Positions 13,971 through 34,732 of a DNA stretch of 64,000 bases are shown here, piece by piece. Every line of letters begins with the position of its first letter. Within the stretch, counting starts at the first letter, position 1. A model generated the notes under the pieces. The model ran no database searches. It was not told the DNA's origin and saw only the letters and a list, made by a program, of their open reading frames with translations. The stretch is from Basidiobolus meristosporus CBS 931.73 (Eukaryota > Fungi > Basidiobolomycota), in contig MCFE01000169.1 of the NCBI GenBank assembly GCA_002104905.1, positions 1 through 64,000 of the forward strand. Reading direction: 5' to 3'. A program made the translations under genes and the position numbers.

Positions 13971-14495
13971 ATGCAGCTTTCCTTCCTCTTGCTAGTTTCC
14001 GCCATCGCTTCATTGCAAGCAATTTCCGCTACCCCACTCGGTGACTCCCAGGTAGCCTTCACCAATGAGCCATGCGTCGAGCAACAGGGTGCTTGTTATC
14101 AGGACACTTCGGCCCCCAGTCAAGAATACCAGCCGTCAACTGAGGAGGGGGATGATTCGGAGATGAGTGCTCCAATGCAGACAAGCGAGACTTCGGGTGA
14201 GCAGTCAGGATTCTCTGGGTTGCAAGGGTTCGATATTTCCAATCTTCAACCATCCCAAGCCTTGCTGGACAAAATCAATGGCCATTCCTCCAGTAAAGCC
14301 AATGCCTTGTCCAACTCAAACCAATTCGACCAAGCGCAAGTCATTGATCAAACCCTGTACCAGCCCAAGCAGCAACAGCCACAAATTATCATCACTCAGC
14401 CAGCAGCGCGTGCGCTTAGAGGTGGGTACAAGAAGTATAAGAGATCTGCTCGTCGCCACTTCAAAGTGAGATATTTCAGTGGAAACAGACATTAA
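13971..14495 (+). CDS. Family B secreted protein (174 aa), intact
   Basis: TATAAA at about 13930 favours the second ATG (13971). It has a signal peptide, an acidic Q/E/S region, core ALLDK...ALSNSNQFDQAQVIDQTLYQP and a basic tail KKYKR-SARRHFKVRYFSGNRH. Confidence 0.85.
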   Translation: MQLSFLLLVSAIASLQAISATPLGDSQVAFTNEPCVEQQGACYQDTSAPSQEYQPSTEEGDDSEMSAPMQTSETSGEQSGFSGLQGFDISNLQPSQALLDKINGHSSSKANALSNSNQFDQAQVIDQTLYQPKQQQPQIIITQPAARALRGGYKKYKRSARRHFKVRYFSGNRH

Positions 14496-14856
14496 GTCCA
14501 GTAAAAGCAAATTTACGAAATAAAATGAGCAATATATTACTAGGCATACTGATGATGTACAAGTATTCAAGAATTTACTGATATGCACACGCAGAAATAG
14601 CGTTCCTTATCGTTGTAAATAGTGGCATAATTTGTATTGAAGAGAATTATGGGCAGTGGTGATAGAACCATATAATATATACAGAGGCTGTCATTCCAGC
14701 GCATGTGTTTTATATGTTACAGGTTTCCTCAATAAAGTCCATAACAGAATGTATCTAATAATACTCACTTTATGCCCTCAGTTTAACCTTATTATATAGC
14801 CTCCCATGCTATATAGCGTCGTATGCAACTAACTTATTTCTCAGCTATTCTTCAGC

Positions 14857-15354
14857 ATGCGCTCTACTACCATAGCAGTGATTCTAGGCCTTGTCGCTCT
14901 TCAAGTTGCCGTTGCTGCCCCAATCGGCTGTTCTTCTCCATGCACTCGCGAGTATAGAAGGGTGCATTATCGCAGCTTACCATGTGCACAGTATGCGAGC
15001 GGTTGCTACCAAAACGCTCGAGTTTTGCCTGTCGTTAAGACGACGAATGTCCAATCCCCGTTATTGCGCCAGGTTTTCACCACGGTGACCAGAAAGCACG
15101 ACAACCTGAACATTGCTAACGCCAACAGCAACAAAGGCTTCAATGTCAAGTATCAAGCAGGGCCCAGTCTCGAACTGGAGGGTAGGGCCAATGCATTAGA
15201 ATATGCTAAGCAAAAGGGAGCAGAACACTTGGAAGATAGTTCTTTCTCTCCCTACGTCCTGATGCAGCCCACCCAAGATATACAATACACAACCCCTGTG
15301 GCAGAGATGCAATGCGTAGAAGATTGTCCAGAGCAAAACGTTCAATACAATTAG
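14857..15354 (+). CDS. Family A secreted protein (165 aa), intact or slightly C-truncated
   Basis: Signal peptide MRSTTIAVILGLVALQVAVA, then APIGCSSPC, the core PLLRQVFTTVTRKHDNLN and C-terminal CVEDCPE. TATA at about 14790-14815. Confidence 0.88.
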   Translation: MRSTTIAVILGLVALQVAVAAPIGCSSPCTREYRRVHYRSLPCAQYASGCYQNARVLPVVKTTNVQSPLLRQVFTTVTRKHDNLNIANANSNKGFNVKYQAGPSLELEGRANALEYAKQKGAEHLEDSSFSPYVLMQPTQDIQYTTPVAEMQCVEDCPEQNVQYN

Positions 15355-15724
15355 TGCGATGACATGAGCTGAAGATGTAGGTAGTCATCACCACGCTACA
15401 ACTGAAAATTCTCAATCAATAAAATTCAAATGACATTCTTATACTTGTTGTTACTTGTGATTAGCTTTTTACTTGCACACACCTGTATCATGATCAGAGC
15501 TGCGGGCATTAATATTAGATTTTCGCTTACGTACTAACATACTCACCCTCAGTCTTTAGTGATGCTGCCCTCCACCGAAAAGGTTGATATTAGAGAGAGT
15601 GTCTGGCAGGGTTACCGGATTGACTTTGGTAACACAAAGATTTGAGATTGACAGACTGCCCAGTGACTGTTAGCATTGTGATATTTCCTCTTATCATTTT
15701 TGTGCAAGCTAAGAGTAAAATAGA

Positions 15725-15806
15725 TGATGAGGGTGGGGTTCGAACCCACGCCTCCGAAGAGACTGCGACCTGAACGCAGCGCCTTAGACCACTCGGCCAC
15801 CTCACC
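15725..15806 (-). tRNA. tRNA-Leu(CAG), intronless, 82 nt
   Basis: GGTGAGGTGGCCGAGTGGTCTAAGGCGCTGCG-TTCAGGT-CGCAGTCTCTTCGGAGGCGTGGGTTCGAACCCCACCCTCATCA. All cloverleaf stems pair and the long variable arm is of the Leu type. Confidence 0.96.
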
Positions 15807-16319
15807 AGCTTGTACTAGGACCTTACGAAAGAGTTTGAAAGGAAATATTCTTGAAGTACTATCATCACTCGAAGCAAGCATCATAAAGTATCTTTACCTA
15901 TTGTTTTGTCGTTACCCATCAGTGTCTTTTCATAATGAAGAAATGGCAATCGAATTTACGATCAATAAAAACAAAATCCCGGGTTTGGCAGACTAAATTA
16001 AACTGAAAATCAGTGGAAGTACGTAGATCTTTTCCTATGTAAATCATTTGTAAACGGAGCAATTGTCTAGATGATACTGAGTAAGAATATACAAAGGTAG
16101 CATATAAGTATCATTCGGTCTCTCTTACTAAGTGGGATCGAGAAGGTGATACAAATCGGGAGTACGAGAAGTTACGCCACTTTAAAGTATGCTCCAGAAA
16201 ATCATGGTGAGTCCCACAAAACAATGGAAGAAATGAGTAAAAATAAGAACTATGGACATGTGTGAGGGGAATGCAGAATGCTGACAATCGTTAGAAGTGT
16301 GCCTGCAGGAACGCAAAAG

Positions 16320-17260
16320 TAGCAGAGACAGAACAAAATGTTCAATACAATTAGTGTGCTGACAAGATAAATAAAGTTAAACTGAGAATATTGAGTAGGC
16401 AAAACAAGTAAACATACTTTGCACAGTCTCACAGACTATTAATCCATGGCTGGCACAGTATACTAGTCCAAAAAAATTGTCATACGACGATACCTCTCAT
16501 CGACAGACACCAAAGGAATAGGGACACTCCACATTTGGTTGGTGGCAAGAGAGAAGTTCAAACAGCGTTGTGTATCAATTACCGTATTTGAAGATACTTT
16601 GGGATGTTCAATGTTTACTCCATCGAACTGTAAAGTATTGTATCGATATTGGGAGTTAAATTTTCGTTTACGTCAATATACGATTGTGTTATGAGTGAGA
16701 CGCAAAACGACTCATACTACGATTTCTCAAGCAAGGGCTTGAAGCGTGCACACAGGAATGGCACTGTTCTCACGTAGCTGGTTATTTCATAGTCAATGTT
16801 CGCAGTCTAGAGCAGTATATATAATACACTTGTTTTTGTTGCTTCCTATATTATGGGATGCGGCCACAAAATGAGTGAAAACTTTTTCGATTTTCTTCCT
16901 ATAAATAGAAGACATCTGCACTTTGCAGGATTATGTATATAGTACATTCCCAGTACACTGAAGGATGGCTTGCACATTCTGATAGCTTGTTGCTACCCAA
17001 ATATCATTCAAAAATCAAATCAAAATACCAATCTATATTGCTACAAATTCACTTCAAAAAGAAAAATGCTTAAAATTTTGATTGCAAAATGGCATACTTG
17101 TTTGAATACAATTCGAGTTTTCTGATCATTAATATTAACTTTAATAACTGAATGTTCAAGTGGGCACACAACTTTGCATAAAAATAGGAAAATCATAAGT
17201 TGGTAGTCAAACTTTATTGTAGTGGCTACTGTTGACCATCCACTCAGACTGCCAATACCC
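16320..17260 (+). repeat. Segmental copy of 7898-9045 (A 3' end + block X + D 5' end)
   Basis: Colinear identity, e.g. GTAGCAGAGACAGAACAAAA, GCAAGGGCTTGAAGCGTGCACACAGGAATGGCAC and CCATCCACTCAGACT. Confidence 0.85.
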
Positions 17261-17340
17261 ACTCTCCTTGTGTCACTTGTATTCTCAAACTATAACAGAG
17301 AGGTTGTGCTTTTTAGGAACCAGATGAGAAATATGGTAAT

Positions 17341-17610
17341 TAATATGCATCAACATTTAAAACTTAGCCAACTTTGCTGCGTTAGGAATTCTAGTACCCT
17401 GACTGATTTTCCCTAACCCAGACATAACTAATCCCAGTTATAGTTTACTTTATCCCACCTCACAATCTATTTTTAGCTGTCACACCTGATCAATTTGCAT
17501 GTGGCATTACATTATCAACTTATCTGCCAAGCCTTCCCAGGTGGTTAGTCCTCTTAGATTCATTCAACCACTTGGCAGTTACTAAGATATCAACTGATTG
17601 ATGATGCAAA
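17341..17610. mobile_element. Partial LTR of family L3
   Basis: Reverse complement of the 52950-53211 end of the TSD-bounded solo LTR. Confidence 0.7.
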
Positions 17611-18739
17611 CACTTTCCTGTGGAAGTGCTTGATGAAGGACAGCAAGATGCCTGCTGAATACTGTGTAAAAGTCTTCTTAACCATACAGCTTTCAGTATT
17701 TGAAGTAACAGCTACTTAGTGAATATGTAGATGTATCATACTAAAGGACATGTGTCAAATTAGGTCTCATACCAACTTGGGTAGCAACTAGATTTCTGTA
17801 CCCTGTATTGAAAGCAAATGAAGAATCAATGCAATATACTGGCTGAATCCAGCTAATTGCCAGCAGAATGCCAGCTGAATATCATCAAGTAAAAGTAAAA
17901 AATCCAAGTATGAAACATTTCATCAGGAGGTTCATTGGGAAATTTGCCATTGATCATAACAGTTATAACCTACTTTCTTTCAATAACTTGGTCAAATCAA
18001 TCCAAATAGTGCTGCATGCCACTTGACAAAGTAAGCCTGTATATTTTTATTGCTGCCAGCCATTCTTGTTGTCTTAGTCATATGGTACCCTCAGAGACCT
18101 GCAACAACTACTTGCATATAGCTACAGATTTTGGCATTGCATTCAGCAACTAAACTTGTGTTTGCAATTGCAACTACTTGATAAGCCAGTATTGCCAAAA
18201 GTTCCATCAATCCTATAAACTCAAAGGTGTATCTTGAACTTGGCAGGAAAGCATTAATGAGTTCTGAGAACATTGAATATTACTTTGCTAATAGTGTGGA
18301 ACATAGTAAAGTGATGTATGTGACTACATATGATTGTGTTAGGTCCTGGACATAAATTGGGTTGGCAATACAGAAAACATAAGTTGGCACATTTGGTCTG
18401 ATTGGATTAGCACTGTTGTGCAAGCAAGATATACACTACTAAAATGCACATAGCACCCTATGAAAAACTTCAAATTTTGATATTTTACTTTTACTACATG
18501 GTGTTTGGGTGGTACTCTACTGGCATTTAGCTGGGATCTGGTCAGTGAACTTCATTAAATTTTTCAAGTGCATTTAACTCTGGAAACAATAGTCTAGTTG
18601 CAACCAAAGTTGGTATGAGTGCTAATGTGGCACAAGTCCCTCTGTTTGGTATATCCACAGGCTGTCAAAGTTGCTGTAACATCAAATTCTCAGAGAGAAC
18701 CTCAAGAAGTCCTGATCTCCTATGGTATCTGACTGGCAT

Positions 18740-21690
18740 CCTGTGGTGGATCCACTGTCCTCTAAATTTTGTCCCCAATCAATATCAGGGTGTCATAAAA
18801 GATCCTGTATTAAGCTCTTACAAGTGTACCTTAAGTGTCTCAGCAGATCCTTTTAGTTATCTAATTCAGCATAAGTGCCACAACAACATTAGATATATAG
18901 TTCTGATTGAGCTGGCACACAATTGCCACTGAATATACAATATCTGGGTATGTTCCAATCAGATATACATCAGACTTCTAGCCATACATTGGTAAGTGAA
19001 TACTGGGCTTTCAGATGGCACCAAGCCCTGTTGATTTGGTAGAATGTTGACCAAGATAAGATGTATCTCTGCTGTAATAGCTGCTGATTCACAGTTTTTC
19101 TTTTGGTACTTCTTAAGTATGTCTTGAATGTACTTGAACTGGCTGAGAATAATAGTCTGGGTTCCTCTGACTTTGGAGTATGTTTTCCTTACAAATTAAC
19201 TGAGCTCTCCTAGATTGGACATTCTGAACTCCTTAAATTGGATGAATTTATTCACCTCTGATTTTTCTTGCTTATTGGTGGCTATAATAAGATTAGACAT
19301 ATATAGAGCTAGTAAAACTGGAATCTCACTATATATTGTACAGTAGATACTATGGTCAGAATCACTCCTCTGAATACTAAAAGATTATAAATAGGGATCT
19401 ATCTTGCAATTTGAAGCTCTTGGTGATTATAAGAGACCATATTGAGATTTTTTAAGTTTGCAGATCTGATAAGGGTTATCTTGGTCAAAGAACTCATCAG
19501 GCTGGTTCATGTTTACTTCCTTATGATGTTTATCACTCAAAAATGCTGCTTATACATCTATTTGACACATTTACAACTTTGACTTGGCTTCAGTAGGCAA
19601 TATCAATCTGATGGAATTAAATTTGACTACTAGTCAAAGATATTGGTGTGGCCCAGTCCAATTGATTGAGAGTACCCTTTTGTCACAGGCCTTGCTTTGT
19701 ATCCTTCAGTTGTACCATTCAGCCTTAATTTGTCTTGATGACCCATGTGCATACAGTTGATTTTCAGTTGATTGGTAATTTAACACAGCCCCAAGATTGA
19801 TTATCTGTTTGGACCAGATATTCCTCAGTCATTGCAGATCTTCAAAACCTTCTCTGCAGGCCATTGCAGGCCTCTGTTACAGTCTGGGGCCCATCACTAT
19901 ATACTGAAGAGGCATAGGCCAAGTCTGTACCCTTATTGATATAGTAATTTGGGCTATATGTAATCCAGCTGAATACCCTACCTTGAGAACCTGTAAAGAT
20001 CACCTCTGGGATATTCCTGAGCACTGGTTTGGACTGAAATCTAGCTGAGGAGTCCTCTGGAGTGAAAAAATCCCCATTGCTTTGCTCCAATTCAATTGAA
20101 ACTACTGCTGGATCTGAGATTGAATTTCTGTCATCATCAAATAAGATTATGCATGAAGATATTGTGTTTTATTAGACAACACATCCCTGAATCTGATCAG
20201 CTTCTTTGCTTTGGCATTGTGGTGAATGTACATGTTACTACCATCTAAATAACCCAAAGGATGCATTTAAGCTTTTTTATGTGTATTCTGGCCAATTTCC
20301 AGACAGTCTCTAAGTATATGATGAGCAGCCAACTGTTCTGAAGTGCTTTGCACTTGGTTTGTAGCCATGCCATGCATTAGATGGAGCAGAACCACAAAGT
20401 ATGACACTATAGTCCCTATTGTTAAGACATACAGCTGTGGCAAGTAATTTCTCTCAGAAATCTCAGGATAATAGCTGATCTCAGATCTTGCCATATAGAT
20501 TATTTATCTGGGGGAATGCTCTGACACTGCATTTTACTGTGTGGAGTATGGTACAGTAGTCTCTTGCTTCATCCTATGAACTTTGCACAAGTGGATGAAC
20601 AGCTCTGAAATATATTTTCTGCCAATGCCACAGTGTAATTTCCTGATTTTTTTCTCCAGTTTCTCTCTCCACCATGGCTTTAAGCTCCCAGAACTTAGAC
20701 AGAGCTTCTTCTTTTACTTCCATGCAAGAGACCCACATGTATCTTGCATAATCATAATAAATGTGATTAAATATTTCATTCTGCCAAATATTATATTTTG
20801 CATAGGTCTATGCATATCAGAGCATATTAGATCTAGTATTTTCTTAGTTTTGACCAGCCCATCACTCTCCAATGGTTATCTGGCCTGTTTCCCTTATGTG
20901 ACAGCCTCACAATGCTCCTAACTGACTGGGGGTAATCTGATCTCTAATTGTTTTGGACAAATAATCATAGCAATGTGTCCAAATGTCCTGTACCATAGCA
21001 TTGGTGTTTCTTTATTTAAGTAACTTACATCAACTTGCAGATACAATGAAATATGAGTCAGCATGTATGGATTCCCACTTCTAATACCCAGAGCAATGTG
21101 GGCAACTCTTGTTTGTGTGCATATTTAGTGCAGACATGAATAGTCTTCTGGTGGCTGATAATGCCTTCCAGGCATTCTTTGCAATTTTTGCTGTTGCGCA
21201 ATGAACTTGCAATTTGTCTTTATTGTTTTGGCAAATGCAGTCAACAACATTTTGTTCTTTCTCCTAGTACTTTAAGGCTTAAGATCCTACAGTGTTAGGA
21301 GGGCATACTTTTCCCCTAACAATGTCTCAAAGGCATCTTTCCTGTAGCAGCATCTTCATCTTCACCTTCCAGACTTGATGTTAGATCCATCCAACTTTGA
21401 AGAGAGTAGCAGCTTAGGGTGCATAACCTGCTGTAAGAGTTTTGAAGTATTTGGAAGTTAATGGGAGAAAGTGTATAATATGTGGTTTTCACTTAATGAT
21501 TTCTTGAATTTAAAAGTAGTAAATATACTTCAACAAGACCATGGTAGAGAAGCATGTAAAATGTGCTTAGAAAGGTCCTGAGAGTAGGTGTGCAAAGTTT
21601 GGGGCTGTTTGGACAACTTTGAGAATTCTCATATTGTGGGTACCTGATGTATTGGTGGGAATATTTCAAGTCCCAACAACAATAACATCA
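18740..21690 (-). mobile_element. Degenerate, truncated Ty1/copia element (same family as 34733-39146)
   Basis: ORF 19842-20090 aligns to 36929-37336. A ...DIDWGQNLED..TTG RT/RNaseH junction lies near 18760-18800. A partial LTR starts at 21429, preceded by the PBS reverse complement GCATAACC. Confidence 0.85.
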
Positions 21691-23065: not shown

Positions 23066-23405
23066 TTAATATCTGCGGTGGCGTCGTTCACAACAACTAC
23101 ACGATGGTTGATCATAATCGCCCTCATCTGGGATAGGTGACTGAATGTATGTAGGCGTAGATGGTTGGAACAACGTCTGATCTACTAGCTGCACTTGGGA
23201 GTATTGATTTGAGTTGGAGAGAGCTTGGGCATCTTGCGCAGAGTTAGCCTGGATGCTGTCCAGCAACGGTGAGGCATCTGGGACATCCGATGGGTAGTCT
23301 GTCGATGAATATGATTCAGTTGGATCAGGGTATGGTGTCTGGTTGTTGTATGTATTGATGGGCCAAGAATACTATGGTGGATAGAATGTAGGTATTGTGG
23401 TGCAT
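23066..23405 (-). pseudogene. Family C pseudogene
   Basis: A 20-nt deletion (GGTGCATCCTATGCATCTCC) in the signal-peptide region relative to 30784-31164 shifts the frame. The core LLDSIQANSAQDAQALSNSNQY is intact downstream. Confidence 0.85.
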
Positions 23406-23874
23406 ATTGGTACTTAGTGATACTCGACAATTACCTTTATCCATACTTTTATACATGATAGGCATGATTGATCAACGATTGTCAGCTACCCAAGCACAGT
23501 TTACTAAATTATCTAGCCAAAGTTAATCATCATTTTATTCAGAACAACCAAATGAAGAGGCGATTATCATTTCACATACATTTCACATTCAATAGTGAAA
23601 TCACTGATCATCGACCAACTTAGCCAATCATTGGTTTGCATGACGAAAAATAAATAAACATCAATTGACCAATTGGCATCCAAGATTGGCATTCATAAGT
23701 ATTGTTCTTATGTAGCCTAATATCTAGCTTTGTCAATATTACGGGATAAAATCTATGGATATTTGAGCCATTGGTCAATACTTTGCTGAGCTAGATATAG
23801 GATTTAGCATAACAAATTATGCCAACTACGGTTATAAAATGAGCTTGTGAATAGTGCTACACTGCTCATCAAGA
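23406..23874. promoter_or_regulatory. Divergent C|B intergenic promoter
   Basis: TATAAAA on the minus strand at about 23447 and on the plus strand at about 23833. Dyad TTTCAC-N8-GTGAAA at 23581-23600 and ATGACGAAAAA at about 23640. Repeated at about 26640-27150, 28310-28850, 31170-31720 and 32830-33250. Confidence 0.65.
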
Positions 23875-24462
23875 ATGCAACTCACTATCGCTTTATTGGC
23901 CTTCTACATTGCCTCCATCCAGGCAATCCCTGTTGCAATAGATGAAGCTTCTCAGGTCAGCTACGGTAACAATTCATGTGGGGAGCAAGTAAGCCCCTGT
24001 TACCAAGAAGCTCAATCCCCCGGATACGACTATCAACCAGAACAGGATGACGGTAGCGAGGAAGATTTCGATATGACTGAGGGCGAAGGCAAAGGTGAAG
24101 GTGAAGGTGAAGGCGAAGGCGGAGACTCAATGGAAGACACTACCACCCAGCCAGAGTTATCGTATAGTGCTGAGTCGGGTATTCCTGACTTCAATTTAGC
24201 TGACATACAGCCACGACAGGCCTTGTTGGACAAAGTAAATACTCACTCCTCCAATAAGGCTGATGCACTATCAAACTCCAATCAGTTTGACCAGGCCCAG
24301 GTCATCGACCAGACCCTCTATCAACCCAAGCAGCAGCAACCCCAAATTATCATCACTCAGCCAGCGCCTCGTAGCTATGGTGGCAGCAGAAAGAAGTACA
24401 AGAGGTCAGCCCACAAGGATTTTAAGATCAGATATTTCAGTGGGAACAGATACTTGGATTAA
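23875..24462 (+). CDS. Family B secreted protein (195 aa), intact
   Basis: ATG at 23875 (MQLTIALLAFYIASIQA), a (GE)n tract, the B core and tail KKYKR-SAHKDFKIRYFSGNRYLD. Confidence 0.87.
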   Translation: MQLTIALLAFYIASIQAIPVAIDEASQVSYGNNSCGEQVSPCYQEAQSPGYDYQPEQDDGSEEDFDMTEGEGKGEGEGEGEGGDSMEDTTTQPELSYSAESGIPDFNLADIQPRQALLDKVNTHSSNKADALSNSNQFDQAQVIDQTLYQPKQQQPQIIITQPAPRSYGGSRKKYKRSAHKDFKIRYFSGNRYLD

Positions 24463-24739
24463 TATTACGAATAAATATCCCATTTGAAGTCATTGAAACA
24501 TCAGCAGCCTTAGTGTGCAAACTGCTATACCACAGGTATTAACAATGGTTGCTACTTGCCTTGTTCCGAAACCGCAACTTTAATTGGGTTTTTGCATATA
24601 AATTCTTGATAAGCACTATTTTTTAACTTTTTGAATTTCCAGTAAGAACGCTTCTTTTCCCCCTAATATCGCTCAAAGTAACAGTCTGCCCATCTACAGA
24701 GCCAGTAGATAAACTCAGGGAAGTGTTGGAGAGTGTCAT

Positions 24740-25130: not shown

Positions 25131-25363
25131 CTAATTGATACACAGGCTAAAATAACCATTTGATGGAAAGTATGCTTAATACAAGCAAATGAACGAAACC
25201 TCAATAAACTCCATATAGATATAGATATATAAGCACTACCTAGCAGTTTGTTTGTAATCTATTAGTAATGTATGGGAACCATGGGTATCCAAACTATACT
25301 ATATAACTTGCTGTGCTATATATTCATCAGTGTACTTCCGTGTGAACGGAACTATTCGACAAG

Positions 25364-25901
25364 ATGCGTTTTACTACAGCAGCAGTGATTTTGGCCCTCG
25401 CTTCTCTTCAACTGGCGGTTGCTGCCCCAATCGGTTGCTCTTCCCCTTGTACCAGTGAGTATAAAAGGACTCATTATCGTAGCTCACCATGTGCACAGTA
25501 TGCGGATAGGTTGCTATCAGAATGTCCAAGTGTTGCCAACCATCAAGACAGTAAATGTCCAAGCCCCATTCTTACGTCAGGTGTTCACTACCGTTACCAG
25601 AAAACACGACAATCTGAACACTGCTACTGCCCGCAGTGATAATGGCTTCAACGTGGAGTACCAAGCAGGTCCCAGTCTCGAAGCAGAGGGCTCAGCTAGC
25701 GCATTAGAATACGCCAAGCAGAAGGAAGCCGAGCACTCGGATGACAGTTATTCGAATCCCTATGTCTTTATGCAGCCCACCCATGATGTGCAATACTCAG
25801 AACCCATGGTTGAGACCCAATGCGTCTCAGACTGTCCTGAGCAAAATGAACAATATACAGAGCCTATAGAGAATACCGAGTGTGCTGATAATTGCGCTTG
25901 A
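25364..25901 (+). pseudogene. Family A copy with a single +1 frameshift
   Basis: Near-identical to 29902-30438 but has an extra T at 25507 (GCGGATAGG vs GCGGAAGG). This may be a real lesion or a sequencing error. Confidence 0.85.
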
Positions 25902-26259
25902 AGTAGCCCAATAAAGCTTACATACTCTTTCTTTCAACCATGAAGAAATAGGGAATTTACTAGAAATCATATGAATAGTATGATGCCAAGTGAGCAATAC
26001 ACCAATTAATGGGCACATATACCCGGGCGCAAATCTCACCCTCCCATAAATATTCACCTCATATGATGGCTGATAAGCAGGGAGGCATAATCCGTCTGTA
26101 ATGATGGTGATGGAGCAGAACATATATACGTATATACCTCTTTTCTTACTAAAAGCCTGCGGAAGGGATGAATATTTACACAATGCATATCTCTCCATGT
26201 ACTCTGGTTTCCCTATTTTATTGTTAACAGCGCAGGAATCTCAGTGCTCCATGTTTACA

Positions 26260-26631
26260 TTAATATCTGTAGCGGCGTCGTTCACAACGACTACACGATG
26301 GTTGATCATAATCATCACTTTCGTATTTGTCTTCGTCCTCATCTGGGATAGGTGATTGCACATATGTGGGCGTAGATGGTTGGAATAACGTCTGATCCAC
26401 CAACTGCACCTGGTCATATTGATTTGAGTTGGAGAGAGCTTGGGCATCCTGCGCAGAGTTAGCCTGGATGCTGTCCAGCAACGGAGAGACATCTGGGAAA
26501 TCCGATGGGTAGTCTGTCGATGAATATGATTCAAGGTATGGTGTCTGGTTGTTATATGTATCGATGGGAGATGCATAGGATGCACCGGCCAAGAATACTA
26601 TGGTGGATAGAATGTAGGTATTGTAATGCAT
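26260..26631 (-). CDS. Family C secreted protein (123 aa), intact
   Basis: MHYNTYILSTIVFLAGASYA is the signal, followed by the core ALSNSNQYDQVQLVDQTLFQP, acidic DEDEDKYESDD and the tail SCSRCERRRYRY. TATA at about 26675. Confidence 0.87.
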   Translation of the reverse strand: MHYNTYILSTIVFLAGASYASPIDTYNNQTPYLESYSSTDYPSDFPDVSPLLDSIQANSAQDAQALSNSNQYDQVQLVDQTLFQPSTPTYVQSPIPDEDEDKYESDDYDQPSCSRCERRRYRY

Positions 26632-27151
26632 TTTGGTGCTTAGCGATACTCGACAATTACTTTTATCCATACTTTTATACCTGATATACATGATAGGCAT
26701 GATTCATCAATGATCATCAGCTACCCAAGCACAGCTTACTAAATTATTTAGCCAAAGTTAATCATCATTCTATTCAGAACAACTAAATGATGAGTTGATT
26801 ATCATCTCACATTCATATCACAATCAATAGTGAAATCAATGGTGTTAATCAGTGACCAAGTTAGCCTACCATTGGGCTGCATGACGAAAAATATATAAAT
26901 ATTAATTGACCAATCGGCATTCAACATTGGCATTCAATATCAGGTTTGTACTAGCAAATATCGAACCTCAAGTCTTCAACTAGGCGAGACCACTCGTGAT
27001 AACTACGATTGTTTATTTATCGTATTTACGAACCAAGTATTGTTCTTACATAGATTACATGATATCTAGCTTTGTTAATATTACGGAATAAAATCTATGG
27101 ATATATGAGCCTTGCTTTCCTGAGTTAGGTAATTATCAAGTGATAGCGAGA

Positions 27152-27229
27152 ATGCTACTTGTTGTTGCTTGGCTGGTTTTATGCGTTCCTACTATCCAAG
27201 TGACTCCTGGTTACGTTGAGATCATTTGA
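27152..27229 (+). pseudogene. Family B 5' remnant
   Basis: AGAATGCTACTT...ACTATCCAAGTGACTCCTG aligns with the B start AGAATGCAACTC...TCCATCCAGGCAATCCCTG and reads MLLVVAWLVLCVPTIQVTPGYVEII*. Similar remnants lie at about 32605 and 33728. Confidence 0.55.
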
Positions 27230-27398
27230 ACGGATATCAATAGCGTTCTTATTACCTATCCTTCATCTATCACAGCTATCTATTAAAATGTGAATACATC
27301 AACGTAGTTATGCTCATCAATATCCAAGCCTTGATATATAGTCAAACGCACTATATATGAAAGATTGTATGAGGCAAAATACTCACTCGTCCTTCAAG

Positions 27399-27953
27399 AT
27401 GCGTGCAACTACTATTATGATGATTTTGGCCCTTGTGTCTCTTCAGACCACCATCGCAGCCCCAGTCCCGTGCTCTTCATGTTCCCGCAAGTATAGAAGA
27501 GTCCGTCAACGTAGCTCACGATGCTCTGACCAAGAAAGCAACTGCCACTCGAGTGACCAAGTTCAACCGATTGTTGAAGTGCCAAATGTCCAAGCCCCAT
27601 TATTGCGACAGGTGTTCACTACCGTTACAAGGAAAAATGACAATCTCAACACTGCTAATGCGAATAGTGACAAGAGCCTTAATGTGAAATATCAGGCTGG
27701 CCCCAGCCTTGAGGCAGAAGGTGAAGCAATTGCCACTGAGTTTGCTAAACAGAAGGGGGACTCTTCCTCAGCAGATGATTCATCATATCCCGTGGTTGTG
27801 GTTCAGCCCTCGCAAGACGTTCAGTATGCAACACCAGTGGTGGATACTCAATGTATTGAAGGTTGCTCAGGCCAGGATGTACAGTACATGGAACCCCTGA
27901 CAGATGCATCATGTGGTGACAATTGTGCTGATCAGTTAACTGAGCCTATGTAA
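27399..27953 (+). CDS. Family A secreted protein, divergent subtype A' (184 aa), intact
   Basis: MRATTIMMILALVSLQTTIA is the signal, followed by PCSSCSRKYRR, the A core and two CxxxC units (CIEGC, CGDNC). Confidence 0.88.
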   Translation: MRATTIMMILALVSLQTTIAAPVPCSSCSRKYRRVRQRSSRCSDQESNCHSSDQVQPIVEVPNVQAPLLRQVFTTVTRKNDNLNTANANSDKSLNVKYQAGPSLEAEGEAIATEFAKQKGDSSSADDSSYPVVVVQPSQDVQYATPVVDTQCIEGCSGQDVQYMEPLTDASCGDNCADQLTEPM

Positions 27954-28853
27954 GACACTCTGTAGTTGATAAATAAACCTCATTGACTCCTATATAAGCG
28001 ATCAGAAGTAGGCATGTTACCTCTGTACTGTAACTGGAGCCTCCATTCGAGTATGTGCGATTGCCACTATGGGTGCCTCATGCTGACATGAACAACAGTG
28101 CAATTGCAACATGATTTGTTCAATTGTAGAGTCAGTGAGGTGAGCGTACAGAGCTGCGTACTAATCAACACATATACAGTAGTGTTTATAGACCAACTAG
28201 TGGGGAAAGTAGCACATATGGAGATAGCCTTATTTACTTAGAAATCAGATGCATAGAACACACCAACCAAGAATGTAGGCATTGTAGTACATCTCAGTGC
28301 TTAGTGATGTTCGTTTATCCATACATCTATACATGACTCATCGACAATCCTCGCTACCCAATACAGTTTACTAAATTATCTAGCCGAAGTTAATCATCAT
28401 TTTGTTCAGAACAACTAAATGAAGAGGCGATTATCATTTCACATGCATTTCACATTCAATAGTGAAATCGGTGGGATTGATCAGCGACCAACTTAGCCAA
28501 TCATTGGGTTGCATAACGAAAGATAAATAAACATTAATTGACCAATTGGCATTCAATATCAGGTTTGTACTTGCAAATATCGAACCTCAAGTCTTCAACT
28601 AGCCGAAACCACTCCTGATTATAAAATAAGTCTATAAGTATGATTTTTTAGACGTATTGGCGCATCAATTTATCTTATTTACGAGCCAAGTATTGTTCTT
28701 ACATAGATTACATAAAATTTAGCTTTGTCGATATTACAAGATAAAATCTATGATGTTTGAGCCATTGTCCAATACTTTGCTGAGCTAGATATAGAGTTTA
28801 GTAACTACGGTTATAAAGTGAGCTTGTGACTGGTGCTACACTGCTCATCAAGA

Positions 28854-28929
28854 ATGCAACTCGCTATCGCTTTACTGGCCTAAGTACTCTAAGATCAGAT
28901 ATTTCAGTGGGAACAGATACTTGGATTAA
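28854..28929 (+). pseudogene. Family B copy with an internal deletion of about 510 bp
   Basis: The signal-peptide start (MQLAIALLA*) is joined directly to the last codons AAGATCAGATATTTCAGTGGGAACAGATACTTGGATTAA of 23875-24462. Both flanks match that gene. Confidence 0.88.
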
Positions 28930-29199
28930 TATTACGAATAAATATCCCATTTGAAGTCACTGAAACATCAGCAGCCTTAGTGTGTGAGCTGCTATACTAC
29001 AGGTATTAACAATGGTTGCTACTAGTCGTATTCTATAATATACATGAATCGCAACTATATTTTACCCTTTATGAATTTCCACGCTCCTTTTCTCTCTTGC
29101 AAACTTGTATATGAGGCAATTCCTATGCTCTGATGTAAATATCACTCACAGTAACAGTCTGCCAATCTACAGAGCCAGTAGATAAACTCAGGGAAGTGT

Positions 29200-29600
29200 T
29201 GGAGAGTGTCATTGAGGAAGTAAAAAGCGATATGACTCATACTACGAGTTGTCAAGCGAGCGCTCGAAGCGTGCACACAGGAATGGCACCGTTCTTACGT
29301 AGATCATTATTTCATTGTCAAGTTGAAGGGATATCTTTCGTTATAAATAATACCTTCATTTTTTTATCCCCAAAATTGTGGGTCTAATTGTGAAAATTTT
29401 CCTCATTTCTTCGGTTATACACATAGCGCTACACCCTCTAGGGAACGATAAGACTGTATATAGTACATTCCCAGTTACTAGTTGAGTTCTAGTGAGCAGT
29501 GACTGATCGGTCCTTCGGTACTAAAGGTTTTATGCAGTTGATGATTGATTATTTCAGCAACCTGGAGAGGACGGCCTGTTCACTCTGACAGCTTGTTTAT
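29200..29600 (+). promoter_or_regulatory. Block X copy 5, upstream of family A gene
   Basis: GGAATG at 29280-29285 and CATTCC at 29466-29471. Confidence 0.6.
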
Positions 29601-29901
29601 TAATATTCGAACTAAACTAATCCATTTGATGGAGAGTATGCTCAATGCAAACAAATGAATGTCTAAACTACTGGAGACTTATAAAACTACTATAGCTTAT
29701 ACAAGTGAGTATGTTATTTCACTTGCTGGATTCCTCAACGTCAATAAACTCCATATATATAGATATATAAGCACTACCTAGCAGTTTGTTTGTAATCTAT
29801 TAGTAGTGTATGGGAACCATGGGTATCCAAACTATACTATATAACTTGCTGTGCTATATATTCATCAGTGTACTTCCGTGTGAACGGAACTATTCGACAA
29901 G

Positions 29902-30438
29902 ATGCGTTTTACTACAGCAGCAGTGATTTTGGCCCTCGCTTCTCTTCAACTGGCGGTTGCTGCTCCAATCGGCTGCTCCTCTCCTTGTACCAGTGAGCGT
30001 AAAAGGGTTAATTATCGTAGCTCACCATGTGCACAGTATGCGGAAGGTTGCCATCAGAATGTCCAAGTGTTGCCAACCATCAAGACAGTAAATGTCCAAG
30101 CCCCATTCTTACGTCAGGTGTTCACTACTGTTACCAGAAAACACGACAATCTGAACACTGCTACTGCCCGCAGTGATAAAGGCTTCAACGTGGAGTACCA
30201 AGCAGGCCCCAGTCTCGAAGCAGAGGGCTCAGCTAGCGCATTAGAATACGCCAAGCAGAAGGAAGCCGAGCACTCGGATGACAGTTATTCGAATCCCTAT
30301 GTCTTTATGCAGCCCACCCATGATGTGCAATACTCAGAACCCATGGTTGAGACCCAATGCGTCTCAGACTGTCCTGAGCAAAATGAACAATATACAGAGC
30401 CCATGGAGAATACCGAGTGTGCTGATAATTGCGCTTGA
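29902..30438 (+). CDS. Family A secreted protein (178 aa), intact
   Basis: Signal peptide, GCSSPC, the ERKR dibasic site, the A core and repeats QYSEP..ETQCVSDC / QYTEP..NTECADNC. Confidence 0.9.
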   Translation: MRFTTAAVILALASLQLAVAAPIGCSSPCTSERKRVNYRSSPCAQYAEGCHQNVQVLPTIKTVNVQAPFLRQVFTTVTRKHDNLNTATARSDKGFNVEYQAGPSLEAEGSASALEYAKQKEAEHSDDSYSNPYVFMQPTHDVQYSEPMVETQCVSDCPEQNEQYTEPMENTECADNCA

Positions 30439-30783
30439 AGTAGCCTAATAAGCTTACATACTCTTTCTTTCAACCATGAAGAAATAGGGAATTTACTAGA
30501 AACAATATGAATAGTATGATGCCAAGGGAGCAATACACCAATTAATGGGCACATATACCCGGGCTCAAATCTCACCCTCCCATAAATATTCACCTCATAT
30601 GATGGCATAATCCGTCTTTAATTATGGCGATAGAGTAGAACATAGATACATACATTTATGCCTCTTTTCTCACTAAAAGCCTGCGGAAGGGATGAATATT
30701 TACACAATGCATATCTCTCCATGTACTCTGGTTTCCCTATTTTATTGTTAACAGCGCAGGAATCTCAGTGCTCCATGTTTACA

Positions 30784-31164
30784 TTAATATCTGTAGCGGC
30801 GTCGTTCACAACGACTACACGATAGTTGATCATAATCATCACTTTCGTATTTGTCTTCGTCCTCATCTGGGATCGGTGATTGCACATATGTAGGCGTAGA
30901 TGGCTGGAATAACGTCTGATCCACCAACTGCACCTGGTCATATTGATTTGAGTTGGAGAGAGCTTGGGCATCTTGCGCAGAGTTAGCCTCGATGCTGTCC
31001 AGCAACGGAGAGGCATCTGGGACATCCGATGGGTAGTCTGTCGATGAATATGATTCAGTTGAATCAAGGTATGGCGTCTGGTTGTTGTATGTATCGATGG
31101 GAGATGCATAGGATGCACCGGCCAAGAATACTAAGGTGGATAGAATGTAGGTATTGTAATGCAT
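30784..31164 (-). CDS. Family C secreted protein (126 aa), intact
   Basis: ATG at 31164. Paralog of 26260-26631. Confidence 0.87.
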   Translation of the reverse strand: MHYNTYILSTLVFLAGASYASPIDTYNNQTPYLDSTESYSSTDYPSDVPDASPLLDSIEANSAQDAQALSNSNQYDQVQLVDQTLFQPSTPTYVQSPIPDEDEDKYESDDYDQLSCSRCERRRYRY

Positions 31165-31724
31165 ATTGGTGCTTAGTGATACTCGACAATTACTTTTATC
31201 CATACTTTTATACATGATAGGCATGATTGATCAACGATTGTCAGCTACCCAAGCACAGCTTACTAAATTATTTAGCCAAAGTTAATCATCATTTTATTCA
31301 GAACAACTAAATGAAGAGGCGATTATCATTTCACATGCACTTCACATACATTTCACATTCAATAGTGAAACCAGTGTTGTTGATCAGCGATCAAGTCAAC
31401 CAATCATTGGGTTGCATGACGAAAAATAAATAAGCATCAATTGACCAATTGGCATTCAAGATTGGCATTCAATATTGGGTTGGTCCTAGCAAATATCGAA
31501 CCTCAAGTCTTCAACTAGGCGAGACCACTCGTGATTATAAAATCAGTCTATAAGTATGATTTACACTATACGTGTTAGCGTATTTATTTCTCGTATCCAT
31601 GAGCTAAGTATTGTTTTTACATGGATTACATAATATCTAGCTTTGTCAATATTACAGGATATATGAGCCATTAGTCGATACTTTGCTGAGTTAGATATAG
31701 GATTTACTGTTATGCAGTTCTAGA

Positions 31725-31980
31725 GTTCTAACCAGAACAGGATGAGGGCGAAGGTGAAGGTGAAGGCAGAGACTGAATGGACGGCAATACCACTCAGCTA
31801 GAGTCACGTGTTCCTGACTTCAAGACAAAGTCAAAGCTCACTCATCCGAGTCACCCAACCAACAACGCGGATGCACCCTCTCAGTCCAATCAGTTTGACC
31901 AAACCCTCTACCAGCAAAGCAGCAACAATCCCAAATTACCATCACTCAGCCAGAAACCGCTAGCTATGGTGGTAACATAA
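31725..31980 (+). pseudogene. Family B internal remnant
   Basis: Contains the GAGGGCGAAGGTGAAGGTGAAGGC tract and QSNQFDQTLYQQ. The 5' end is missing and there are multiple deletions. Confidence 0.75.
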
Positions 31981-32218
31981 TCATATCTATGGCGTAGCAC
32001 GATGGGGAGCAGGACAAGGCTGTCCAGTTTGCAAGATAATAAGCCAGCTACGATTAGTGGACAGTAGATGAATTGGATAATGATGGAAATAAACAATAAA
32101 TCATAGTAGCTGGGGAAGTTGTTGGCTGGCTGTCACTGAACGCTCTGTATTAGCACGCAGTAGGCACATAAGAATTTATTTATGACAGAATGAAAAGGAT
32201 TGATTATATTTGTTTGCA

Positions 32219-32340
32219 TTAATATCTGCGTCTACGGTTGCGTCGTTGACAACGGTTGCACGACGGTGAATCATTGTCGTCGCCTTCATCCAAAGCGACA
32301 GTTTGCACGTATGACGGCACAGATTCAGGTTAGTACAATG
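32219..32340 (-). pseudogene. Family C 3' fragment, divergent subtype
   Basis: Reverse complement reads PESVPSYVQTVALDEGDDNDSPSCNRCQRRNRRRRY*. A second decayed copy lies at about 33550-33630. Confidence 0.7.
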
Positions 32341-33974
32341 TCTGATCGTATTGGTTCTGGTTAGAAAGAGCACTGGTTAGGTAATAGTTAATCAGAGTGA
32401 ATAAAGTTAATCACTTTCAATTAGAGTTGATTGGGATTTGTTTATTCAATATCAAGTAAACACGACAACTATCAGTATGTTGGGCAGCGCCATTCTATCA
32501 TTGGTAGTATTGTGGGTTTGATTCTATAAATGCTTGAATATACAAATCCATTGATTCATAGAAATATACATGAATTGGGTAACTATAGAGTAACTGCGAG
32601 AATGCTACTTGTTGTTATTTGACAGGTTCAATATATTACTACCATTCAGGTGAGTCCTGGTGATATCGAGAGCGTTCTTACATCCGTCACAGCAATTGAA
32701 AGCTAATCAGCTACATCAACCATCAATATCCAAGATATAATACGTAGCCAAATGCACTATATATCTTCCCAAGTGTATGAAGCAAAATACTCAGTAACCC
32801 TTCAAGATGCGTCTCGGTGCTTAGTGATGTTCGTTTATCCATACAGTTATACATGATTCATCAACGATCATCACTACCCAAGTACAGTTTATTAAATTAT
32901 CTAGCCAAAGTTAATCATCATTTTGTTTAGAACAACTAAAAGAGTCGATTATCGTTTCACATTCAATAGTGAAATCAGTGGTGTTAACCAATCATATGAC
33001 AAAAAGTAAATAAACACCTATTTCAGATTGGCATACAATATTAGGTTAGTACTGGCAAATATCAATCCTAAGGTCTTCAACTAGGCGAGACCACTCGTGA
33101 TAACTACGATTGTTTATTCATCGTATCTACAAACCAAGTATTGTTCTTACATAGATTACATGATATTCAATATTACAGCATAAAATCTTGGATAGACCAC
33201 TCATGATTATACAAATAAGCTACAATTTTCCTACACATGTTGGCGCGTTTATTAATCGTAGATATGAGCCAAGTGGTCTTCCTACTTCAAACATCTTCAA
33301 ATAACACTTTATACTATTGCCGATGCTTATTTCTATCGTATAAAACATAGGTCAAGGCTATCCAGTTTGCAAGCCAGCTACGATTAGTAGTTAATTCTTA
33401 GATCGTGTCACAGTAGAAATAAACAATAAATCATAGTAGCCGGGGAAGTTGTTGGCTGGTTGTTACTGAACATGCTGTATTAGCACGCAGTGTACACACA
33501 CAAATTCATTGATGACAGAATGAAAAAGGTTTGATTATATTTGTTTGCATTAATATCTGCGTCTACGGTTGCGTTGTTTACAACGGCTGCATGTATGCCT
33601 TCATCCAAAACGTATGACGGCACAAGCTATCAGTGTACTGAGCAGCAATATTCTATTATTGGTAATATCTGGATATACTTGATATGTCAAAGCTTTCCTG
33701 AGTTGGGTAGTTATACAGTGATGGCAAGAATGCTACTTGCTATTGCTTAGTTGTTTCTATATGTTGCTACTATCCAAGTGACTCCTGGTTACATTTTGGT
33801 CATTTGAATGGATATCAAAATTGTTCTTATTACCTATTGTTCATTGATCCCAGCTATCTATTACAGTGTGAATACATCAACATAGTTTTACTCACCTATA
33901 TCCAAGCCTGATTTATAGTCAAATTGACTATATATAAATGAATGTATGTGGTAAATTACTCAGTAATCTTCAAG

Positions 33975-34668
33975 ATGTGTGCAACCACTATTATGATGAT
34001 TTTGTCCCTTGTGTTTCTGAAGGTCATCATTGCAGCCCCAGTTCCATGTTCCCCTTCATGTTCACACATGAATAATAGAGTGTGTCAATGTAGCTCACAA
34101 TGCTTCTACTAAGAAAGTGACCACTACCTGAGTGACCAAGTACAATCAATTGCTGAAGTACCAAATGTCCAAGCCCCATTATTGTAATTGGTGTTCACTA
34201 CCATTACAAGGAAAAAGGACAATCCCAACACTGCTATTACAAATAGTGACAAGAGCCTTAATGTGAACTATCTATATGAGGTGGAAGGTGCAGCAATGGG
34301 CACTGAGTTGGCTAAATACCAGGGTGCAGAATCATGTGCTGATGGTGCATCATATCCAATTGTGGTGGTTCAGTGCTCTCAAGACATTTAGTACTATATT
34401 TTTTTATTGGTAATTCAGATTAATATTCTACCCAAAAGCTTGTCTAACAGTCAATTGGGATCATATGAGTACATATTAAGAAAAGTCTTGATCTGGGTAC
34501 CTGACAATCTAATGAAGATATTTCAGGTAAATCCCAACAAGAAATCTCAGCAGGAAGTAGTAATAATCATAGACTTAGATCTATATGCTTTGGTTAGCAT
34601 GAATATTTAGGTGACAACTTAATAATTACAACAACAATTGTGCTGATTAGTTGACTGGGCCCATGTGA
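33975..34668 (+). pseudogene. CpG-decayed copy of A' with an LTR-like insert (about 34400-34633)
   Basis: Colinear with 27399-27953 and has multiple stops. The insert ends in TAATTACAACA and resembles the copia LTR in reverse orientation. Confidence 0.82.
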
Positions 34669-34732
34669 GACACCCTAAAGTTTGTAAATAAACTGCCTTG
34701 ATTCATCTATAAGCAACCAGAAGTAGCCATGG

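What the first reader, a model, noticed from the sequence alone, without database searches (positions are those of the whole stretch)
13971..34668. A three-gene secreted-protein module (C | B - A) amplified by tandem duplication: candidate undescribed extracellular assembly system
Seen: three unrelated-looking, intronless, signal-peptide families keep one order and polarity, with C on minus, a shared promoter of about 450-500 bp, then B and A on plus. Complete or degraded units start near 23.0, 26.2, 28.2, 30.7, 32.2 and 33.5 kb, and a B-A pair lies at 13971-15354. Paralogs recur at a period of about 4.5 kb (25364 to 29902; 26631 to 31164). Two B, three A and two C copies are intact, so every family keeps working members despite heavy decay. 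I recognise no known domain. Inference: co-regulated subunits of one structure, such as a spore wall, coat or adhesive, or a host-facing effector set.
Basis: partly seen in the sequence, partly recalled or inferred. Interest (0 to 1): 0.8.

Follow-up and report, generated by a model that had tools for sequence, protein, structure and literature searches.

The report
Basidiobolus-only secreted mosaic gene cluster
A frog-gut fungus (Basidiobolus) carries a decaying tandem cluster of small exported, floppy proteins found only in this genus; the three "families" are one mosaic family built from a few short conserved pieces, and their job is untested.

Summary
Between 13.9 and 34.5 kb, and also at 2-8 kb outside the flagged span, lie two intact B, three intact A and two intact C genes plus at least nine broken copies. 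They were copied in about 4.5-kb segments, and C is read divergently from B or A.

- B and C share a 39-43-residue Gln/Asn-rich core (hhalign probability 98%).
- A and B share the N-terminal signal-plus-Cys-pair piece (probability 89.5%).
- B. ranarum has single-chain proteins joining the A core to a B- or C-type core.

So this is one modular family, not three unrelated subunits. A profile search of 1.84 billion proteins found 42 relatives. Every one that carries a source name is from B. meristosporus or B. ranarum. Pfam, PDB sequences and the ESM Atlas gave nothing, and AlphaFold2 models are disordered.

Intact copies are under purifying selection (dN/dS 0.16-0.22). B-A adjacency recurs on about 17 contigs of B. 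meristosporus CBS 931.73.

Function is unknown. My best guess is that these are co-expressed, charge-patterned extracellular matrix, coat or glue proteins. A cationic-peptide precursor role is the main rival.

The parts
1995..2489 (-). Degraded A copy; the match is spread over three reading frames
   Evidence: tblastn; ORFs
2834..3016 (-). B fragment: C-terminal third only (Q-core end plus tail)
   Evidence: tblastn
3036..3290 (+). A fragment: from the A-core onward, no start or signal peptide
   Evidence: tblastn; ORF
7456..7953 (+). A copy with in-frame stops (first one after codon 107)
13971..14495 (+). B1, intact, 174 aa (an upstream ATG lies at 13950); 99% identical to P0038 of CBS 931.73
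14857..15354 (+). A1, intact, 165 aa; 96% identical to P0002
15723..15807 (-). tRNA-Leu(CAG) just downstream of A1. The same B-A-tRNA order shows in the CBS 931.73 fused model P0042, which translates through the tRNA.
23069..23465 (-). C copy broken by a frame change (two frames needed)
   Evidence: tblastn
23406..23874 (.). Divergent C|B spacer, 469 bp, with CCAATCATTGG and GACCAATTGGCAT palindromes. Paralogous copies at 26632-27120, 28338-28780 and 31165-31690; remnant at 32830-33210.
23875..24462 (+). B2, intact, 195 aa (GTG-started ORF from 23854); 97% identical to P0029
25364..25901 (+). A copy with one frame change near 25505-25508; otherwise 92-98% identical in protein to A4
26260..26631 (-). 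C2, intact, 123 aa from the Met supported by homologs (ORF runs up to 26700)
27399..27953 (+). A3, intact, 184 aa; read divergently from C2 across a 767-bp spacer
28254..28337 (-). C fragment (N-terminal about 30 codons)
   Evidence: tblastn
28854..28929 (+). B remnant: start codon plus about 9 codons joined to the last about 12 codons; about 510 bp of the coding region is missing
29902..30438 (+). A4, intact, 178 aa; 94% identical to P0001
30784..31164 (-). C3, intact, 126 aa (ORF runs up to 31224); identical to P0054
33975..34430 (+). A copy (A3-like) with three in-frame stops

Best explanation
Shown:
- This is a birth-and-death tandem cluster of one modular family of small proteins with signal-peptide-like N-termini, predicted to be disordered. 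The family is found only in Basidiobolus, and the cluster sits in a transposon-rich region.
- The family is assembled from five short conserved pieces: (i) a signal peptide plus a Y-x4-C-x6-C piece (in A and B); (ii) the A-core, PLLRQVFTTVTRKHDNLNTA..KYQAGPSLE.EG; (iii) the Q-core, ALLD..N.HS...A.ALSNSNQFDQAQ..DQTLYQP (in B and C); (iv) a cationic aromatic B tail, KKYK..FKIRYFSGNRY; (v) an acidic run plus a C-x2-C Arg/Tyr tail in C.
- In this genome the pieces are split over neighbouring genes, with C read divergently from B or A across a conserved CCAAT-box spacer. In B. ranarum the A-core and a Q-core also sit on one chain.

Inferred:
- The neighbouring genes are co-expressed.
- The products act together outside the cell as non-enzymatic, charge-patterned matrix, coat or glue components.
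- The two invariant cores bind each other or a common wall partner, and the cationic aromatic tails hold them to anionic surfaces.
For: - Family map and duplication structure.
- B and C share a core: BLASTP 1e-12; hhalign probability 98.3%, E 1e-14.
- A and B share the N-terminal piece: probability 89.5%, E 2e-6.
- Single-chain A+B proteins (P0071, P0072, P0076) and A+C-type proteins (P0083, P0085) exist in B. ranarum. The linkers of the three A+B proteins are conserved in frame (39-61% identity); those three and P0083 were checked for an internal signal-like hydrophobic run and have none.
- B-then-A adjacency is shown directly by at least 10 fused gene models in CBS 931.73, and by shared contigs.
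- Purifying selection: dN/dS 0.16 and 0.22.
- The cores are nearly invariant between species that are only 35-50% identical overall.
- The proteins are hydrophilic and charge-blocked.
- The models are disordered apart from the N-terminal signal-peptide helix, confident only for P0076.
- The family is genus-restricted: 42 hits among 1.84 billion proteins, and every one with a source name is Basidiobolus.
Against: - There are no expression, proteomic or localisation data.
- No signal-peptide predictor was available.
- AlphaFold2 shows no A-core/Q-core contact and no fold, though the alignments are shallow.
- Linkage may simply be inherited through segmental duplication.
- In B. ranarum, stand-alone A and B genes were not seen on shared contigs, though those contigs are short.
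- Half of the copies here are dead, so dosage is clearly not strictly maintained.
- The frame changes could be assembly errors.
Confidence: 0.4

Rival explanations
1. Precursors of cationic peptides. The acidic body masks a C-terminal Lys/Arg/Tyr/Phe-rich tail (B: about 17-22 residues after KKYKR; C: an Arg/Tyr tail). The tail is released by a Kex2-like protease and acts on gut bacteria or as a signal.
For: - An acidic block is followed by a +6 to +7 tail in B; C has an acidic block followed by a short Arg/Tyr-rich end.
- A KR site precedes the tail in B. meristosporus-type B proteins.
- The tail is conserved into B. ranarum.
- A defensin-like ORF lies next to the cluster.
- Other notes of this scan describe the same layout in other Basidiobolus arrays (leads only).
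Against: - The dibasic site is not conserved: B. ranarum has KK, RK or none.
- The most conserved parts are the Q-core and A-core, not the tail.
- Family A has no cationic tail.
- No repeat-peptide layout is present.
Confidence: 0.25
2. Fast-turnover, host- or microbe-facing effectors. Each acts alone on an external target and is kept in a transposon-rich, duplication-prone compartment, like the effector clusters of plant-pathogenic fungi.
For: - Small proteins with signal-peptide-like N-termini, restricted to one genus.
- Tandem duplication with many dead copies.
- Copia, Ty3 and DDE elements flank the cluster.
Against: - The cores are nearly invariant across paralogs and between species, and dN/dS is 0.16-0.22. 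This fits a conserved partner better than an arms race.
- No host-induced expression data exist.
Confidence: 0.15
3. One reading: three unrelated subunits of a dedicated three-gene extracellular assembly system, kept in a fixed C|B-A order by selection.
For: - Recurrent linkage of A, B and C on contigs of CBS 931.73.
- A conserved divergent spacer.
Against: - B and C are homologs, and A and B share a piece.
- Only one full unit is present, and two of its three genes are broken.
- C pairs with A directly in another unit, and B was deleted from a third.
- The B1-A1 pair has no C.
Confidence: 0.1
4. A decaying, functionless gene family or an annotation artefact.
For: - At least nine of sixteen copies in the window are broken.
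- There is no expression evidence.
Against: - dN/dS is well below 1.
- Intact orthologs at 94-99% identity exist in CBS 931.73.
- The cores are conserved into B. ranarum.
Confidence: 0.05

Closest known systems
Lineage-specific clusters of small secreted proteins in fungi (for example the Ustilago maydis secreted-effector gene clusters; from my own knowledge)
   Same: Small genes whose products have signal-peptide-like N-termini and no known domains; tandem duplication and divergently read pairs; transposon-rich surroundings; taxon restriction.
   Different: No host-induced expression is known. The cores are extremely conserved rather than diversifying. The family is mosaic, with split and fused forms. 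The organism is a gut commensal of the Zoopagomycota, not a plant pathogen.
Anionic-propiece/cationic-peptide precursors (the antimicrobial-peptide precursor design of animals), and other Basidiobolus arrays noted by this scan
   Same: Signal peptide, acidic block, then a cationic aromatic C-terminal tail.
   Different: The processing site is not conserved across species. The long, invariant Gln/Asn-rich core has no counterpart. Family A lacks the tail.
Kex2-processed repeat proteins (KEPs); PMC7329392 reports that B. meristosporus has the most KEPs (43) of the fungi surveyed
   Same: Secreted-type, disordered proteins with dibasic sites, abundant in this genus.
   Different: There are no tandem repeat peptides separated by KR/RR sites. 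Each core occurs once per protein.
Functional amyloid or adhesive proteins with Gln/Asn-rich cores or Lys/Tyr-rich cation-pi tails (curli CsgA, mussel foot proteins; from my own knowledge)
   Same: A Gln/Asn/Ser-rich conserved core with a beta-prone QIIITQ segment, Lys/Arg/Tyr/Phe/Gly-rich tails and extracellular disorder.
   Different: No sequence relation was found, no repeat array is present, and no structural or biochemical evidence exists. This is a resemblance of composition only.

Membership tests
CBM1 (the name UniRef gives to P0001, P0012, P0019, P0036) | Match to the Pfam CBM_1 model: a four-Cys, aromatic-rich module of about 36 aa | tested here: not met
   Pfam scan of the seven window proteins at E up to 1 gave no CBM_1 hit. 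The precomputed Pfam column is '-' for all homologs.
CAP/SCP domain proteins (the name UniRef gives to P0048, P0049) | A CAP (PF00188) domain | tested here: not met
   Both sequences are B-A fused models with no further domain. The precomputed Pfam column is '-'.
Kex2-processed repeat proteins (KEPs) | Signal peptide plus three or more repeated peptides separated by KR/RR sites | tested here: not met
   Family alignments show each core once and no KR-delimited repeats. The KR before the B tail is replaced by KK or RK in B. ranarum.
Hydrophobins | Eight Cys in the C-CC-C-C-CC-C pattern and a hydrophobic mature protein | tested here: not met
   The proteins have 2-8 Cys with no CC pairs, and GRAVY is -0.6 to -1.2.
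Cationic peptide precursor (antimicrobial-peptide-like design) | Signal peptide, anionic propiece and a cationic C-terminal peptide | tested here: met
   Charge windows of B run from -8 in the middle to +6 or +7 at the tail; C has an acidic block and a short Arg/Tyr end. Family A does not fit.
Cationic peptide precursor (antimicrobial-peptide-like design) | A conserved proteolytic processing site before the peptide | tested here: inconclusive
   KYKR-S is conserved in B. meristosporus-type B proteins, but the site reads KK, RK or none in B. ranarum.
Cationic peptide precursor (antimicrobial-peptide-like design) | Release and activity of the peptide | not testable with these tools
   Needs mass spectrometry and bioassays.
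Fungal small-secreted-protein / effector-like gene cluster (a generic kind) | N-terminal signal peptide, size under 300 aa and no transmembrane segment | tested here: met
   Each protein has a hydrophobic 12-residue N-terminal window (Kyte-Doolittle 2.0-2.7) followed by a small-x-small site, and a hydrophilic remainder. The structure models show an N-terminal helix, confident (pLDDT 88-94) for P0076 and about 53-60 for A4. No SignalP-type predictor was available.
Fungal small-secreted-protein / effector-like gene cluster (a generic kind) | Taxon-restricted, tandemly duplicated, near transposons | tested here: met
Fungal small-secreted-protein / effector-like gene cluster (a generic kind) | Co-regulated expression in a defined stage or host | not testable with these tools
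   No transcript data could be reached. Literature searches found none.
Curli-type functional amyloid | Several imperfect Gln/Asn repeats forming a beta-solenoid | tested here: not met
   There is a single core per protein, no PDB sequence match, and no beta structure in the model.

The most novel reading that the evidence does not exclude
The A-core and the Q-core are complementary docking motifs of a genus-specific extracellular material, for example the glue of the adhesive capilliconidia or a spore or hyphal coat in a lineage that lacks hydrophobins (the lack of hydrophobins is from my own knowledge). The same two-motif design would be realised either as one chain (B. ranarum) or as neighbouring, divergently co-transcribed genes (this genome). 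The cationic aromatic tails would provide surface attachment.
Probability: 0.15. Interest if true: 0.65.

Novelty: new member of a known kind. Interest (0 to 1): 0.4.

Why it matters
Basidiobolus is an early-diverging fungus with a complex life cycle (frog and lizard gut, insect-borne sticky spores) and an occasional pathogen of people and animals. Almost none of its secreted proteins have a known role.

This family has at least 60 gene models in one genome and is strictly conserved in two short cores. That makes it a tractable candidate for a genus-specific surface, glue or peptide system. The split and fused forms give a ready hypothesis of which pieces work together.

The work also flags systematic annotation errors in the reference genome: B-A gene models fused across the spacer, and spurious 'CBM1' and 'SCP' names.

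If it is simply one more small-secreted-protein cluster, the value is modest: a cleaner family definition and a caution against reading tandem linkage as a 'system'.

Tried and rejected
- **Pfam:** scans of all seven intact proteins gave only sub-threshold chance hits.
- **PDB sequence profiles:** searches with the A and B alignments were blank.
- **ESM Atlas:** no usable hit for A4 or B2.
- **AlphaFold2:** A4 with a 25-sequence alignment gave pLDDT 41. The single-chain A+B protein P0076 with a 28-sequence alignment gave pLDDT 52, confident only in the signal peptide. I ran no fold search, because models of such low confidence give meaningless matches.
- **First A-versus-B hhalign hit:** the hit was an artefact of a fused gene model (P0045) in the B alignment and was discarded. 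The clean comparison supports only the N-terminal piece.
- **A versus C:** no relation detected. The idea that the A-core and Q-core are homologous in register, raised by another first-stage note, is therefore not supported statistically here.
- **The look-up of encoding contigs:** Synteny in CBS 931.73 rests on matching contig lengths, neighbouring protein numbers and fused models. The exon structure of the B. ranarum single-chain proteins could not be checked.
- **Literature:** searches for Basidiobolus secretome, adhesive or transcriptome data found nothing on these families.
- **Earlier scan notes:** look-ups by sequence and by words were blank.


Full report
**Source organism**

The window is fungal DNA from Basidiobolus (Zoopagomycota).
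- The best protein matches of every family member are hypothetical proteins of B. meristosporus CBS 931.73, at 94-99% identity for A1, A4, B1 and B2.
- More distant matches are from B. ranarum.
- Two of the window's own proteins (P0054, P0009) are on record from a 145,046-bp contig.
- A3, C2 and C3 have no annotated counterpart above 66% and 58% identity in CBS 931.73. The window is therefore B. meristosporus or a very close relative, not that exact assembly.

**Anatomy**

ORF listing, repeat finding, tblastn and self-blastn give the following map.

Intact genes:
- B1: 13971-14495 (+)
- A1: 14857-15354 (+)
- B2: 23875-24462 (+)
- C2: 26260-26631 (-)
- A3: 27399-27953 (+)
- A4: 29902-30438 (+)
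- C3: 30784-31164 (-)

Broken copies:
- C at 23069-23465: frame change.
- A at 25364-25901: frame change near 25505.
- C fragment at 28254-28337.
- B remnant at 28854-28929: keeps the start and the last dozen codons, but about 510 bp of the middle is missing.
- A at 33975-34430: three in-frame stops.

Four more degraded copies lie outside the flagged span:
- 1995-2489 (-)
- 2834-3016 (-)
- 3036-3290 (+)
- 7456-7953 (+), with in-frame stops

Further points:
- The segment 23.7-27.1 kb is repeated at 28.7-31.7 kb with 81-91% identity and a period of 4524-4538 bp.
- The spacer next to C exists in five copies. It carries CCAATCATTGG and GACCAATTGGCAT palindromes, found 3-4 times against 0.14-0.16 expected by chance.
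- These motifs occur only in the paralogous spacers. They show descent and fit a two-way promoter, but they do not prove regulation.
- A tRNA-Leu(CAG) gene follows A1.
- The surroundings are transposon-rich: a Copia-type element at 34.7-39.1 kb, an older inverted copy at 18.7-21.7 kb, Ty3-type ORFs at 46.9-55.8 kb and a DDE transposase ORF at 40.3-40.8 kb.

However, only one complete C|B-A unit exists (23.07-25.9 kb), and its C and A are both broken. C2 pairs directly with A3 across 767 bp. The B1-A1 pair has no C.

**Are the genes real?**

- Intact paralogs show dN/dS of 0.16 (A1/A4) and 0.22 (C2/C3). The other pairs are saturated at silent sites.
- ORF lengths equal those of the annotated single-exon models in CBS 931.73.
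- All seven proteins begin with a hydrophobic, signal-peptide-like segment. The rest is strongly hydrophilic (GRAVY -0.6 to -1.2) and rich in Gln, Ser, Asp and Glu.
- No dedicated signal-peptide predictor was available. AlphaFold2 gave a confident N-terminal helix (pLDDT 88-94) in the P0076 model and an N-terminal helix at pLDDT about 53-60 in the A4 model.

**The three families are not unrelated**

- B and C share a 39-43-residue core, ALLD..N.HS...A.ALSNSNQ(F/Y)DQ.Q..DQTL(Y/F)QP. BLASTP gives E 1e-12. hhalign of the family alignments gives probability 98.3% and E 1e-14.
- A and B share the N-terminal piece: a signal peptide followed by Y-x4-C-x6-C. hhalign gives probability 89.5% and E 2e-6. 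An earlier, stronger A-B hit was caused by a fused gene model in the alignment and was discarded.
- A and C show no detectable relation.

B. ranarum encodes proteins that carry the A-core and a Q-core on one chain:
- P0071, P0072 and P0076 have the N-terminal piece, the A-core, a Met-rich linker, the Q-core and the B tail.
- P0083 and P0085 have the A-core plus a C-type Q-core and a C-type tail.
- The linkers of P0071, P0072 and P0076 are conserved in frame between paralogs (39-61% identity).
- The linkers of those three and of P0083 contain no internal signal-like hydrophobic run (P0085 was not examined). This argues that they are genuine single chains.

By contrast, the many B-A fused models of CBS 931.73 are probably annotation errors. 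Several of them (P0011, P0016, P0028, P0049, P0050) read through A's own signal peptide. All of them, including P0015, P0024, P0042, P0045 and P0048, still prove B-then-A adjacency on one strand at 10 or more further loci.

The family is best described as a mosaic of five short pieces: the N-terminal piece, the A-core, the Q-core, the B tail and the C tail.

**Distribution**

I built a profile covering both B and A from an alignment of fused and single proteins (A6, checked). I searched it against 1.84 billion representative proteins.
- It found 42 proteins at E up to 0.001.
- Every one of these with a source name is from B. meristosporus or B. ranarum.
- One further relative, P0055, turned up only in the C word search. 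It comes from an unnamed 774-bp ENA contig.
- Pfam, PDB sequence profiles and the ESM Atlas gave nothing.
- The UniRef names 'CBM1 domain', 'SCP domain', 'C2H2-type' and 'C3H1-type' on some members have no Pfam support.

**Linkage elsewhere**

I used the contig length as a fingerprint of each contig and counted the fused models as well.
- About 17 contigs of CBS 931.73 carry both A and B.
- 9 contigs carry A only, and 5 carry B only.
- 6 of the 9 contigs with C also carry A or B.
- Neighbouring JGI protein numbers fit the triad: 302776/302777, 307425/307426, 357137/357138 and 359260/359262.
- In B. ranarum, stand-alone A and B genes were not seen on shared contigs, but those contigs are only 1-12 kb long.

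The linkage can be inherited by whole-segment duplication, however, so it does not by itself show selection for gene order.

**Structure**

- AlphaFold2 on A4 with 25 homologs gave mean pLDDT 41.
- AlphaFold2 on the single-chain A+B protein P0076 with 28 sequences gave mean pLDDT 52. Only the signal peptide was confident, and there was no secondary structure or core-to-core contact.
- I ran no fold search on such models.
- The proteins are predicted to be disordered, or the alignments are too shallow for the method.

**Mechanism**

The shown part is a genus-restricted mosaic family with signal-peptide-like N-termini, evolving by tandem birth and death under purifying selection. It has two near-invariant cores and charge blocks:
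- B has an acidic block reaching -8 followed by a tail of +6 to +7.
- C has an acidic block followed by a short Arg/Tyr-rich end.
- A is basic in its N-terminal part and acidic in its C-terminal part.

The inferred part is that neighbours are co-expressed from the divergent spacer. The products would then act together outside the cell as matrix, coat or glue components. The cores would serve as docking motifs and the cationic aromatic tails as anchors to anionic surfaces.
- Arguments for: the A+Q single chains in B. ranarum, and the extreme conservation of the cores. Both fit a conserved partner better than an arms race.
- Main rival: a cationic-peptide precursor, with an acidic propiece and a basic tail after KR. 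This is weakened because the dibasic site is not conserved in B. ranarum and because A lacks a tail.
The report's rival section scores each.

**Comparison and novelty**

- The closest known kind is the lineage-specific cluster of small secreted proteins in fungi. This cluster is a new, undescribed sequence family of that kind.
- It is not a KEP (no KR-delimited repeats), not a hydrophobin, not CBM1 or CAP, and not curli-like.
- The KEP survey PMC7329392 notes that B. meristosporus has the most KEPs of any fungus surveyed. The secretome survey PMC9391592 sets the Basidiobolus secretomes apart from those of their relatives. Neither paper mentions these families in the passages I read.
- Other notes of this scan report several further Basidiobolus tandem arrays with the same acidic-block/cationic-tail design, so the theme recurs in this genome. 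A sister note on this same stretch proposes that A, B and C share a core in register. I confirm this for B and C, but not for A.

**Safety note**

Basidiobolus can infect people and animals, and these proteins are uncharacterised. The broken copies were only described.

Noticed in passing
window 11095-11379 (+): An ORF with a signal-like N-terminus and a six-cysteine C-terminal peptide (defensin-like) lies about 2.6 kb upstream of B1. Another note of this scan also flagged it.
   Followed up: no
window 34732-39144; 18738-21683: A Copia-type LTR retrotransposon (gag, integrase and RT ORFs) has 348-bp end repeats that are 94% alike and bounds the cluster on the right. An older inverted copy sits inside the cluster between the B1-A1 pair and the 23-kb unit.
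   Followed up: partly
window 40251-40841 (-); 46876-55810 (-): A DDE_Tnp_4 transposase ORF, and Ty3/Gypsy-type gag, RT, RNase H and integrase ORFs in at least two partial copies. GC skew is strongly positive (+0.1 to +0.26) over 50-58 kb.
   Followed up: partly
window 15723-15807 (-); 3051-3723: tRNA-Leu(CAG) follows A1, and a 69%-identical copy of the A-plus-tRNA segment lies at 3.05-3.72 kb with no tRNA called there. The CBS 931.73 model P0042 translates through the orthologous tRNA gene.
   Followed up: partly
P0072 (B. ranarum K7432_003216), linker residues about 165-260: The linker between the A-core and the Q-core holds five KPKKHHT(W/S)E repeats and about six MEMPxMEKT repeats. This is a Met/His-rich stretch with a metal-binding look.
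   Followed up: no
B. meristosporus CBS 931.73 models P0011, P0015, P0016, P0024, P0028, P0042, P0045, P0048, P0049, P0050: These gene models join B and A across the spacer, and several read through A's own signal peptide. They are probable annotation errors. The UniRef names 'CBM1', 'SCP', 'C2H2-type' and 'C3H1-type' on family members lack Pfam support.
   Followed up: partly
A-family C-termini (e.g. window 30330-30435): The A proteins end in one to three copies of a (T/A)QC-x2-x-C-x2-Q-x2-QYTEPME unit containing a CxxxC pair. The copy number varies between paralogs.
   Followed up: no
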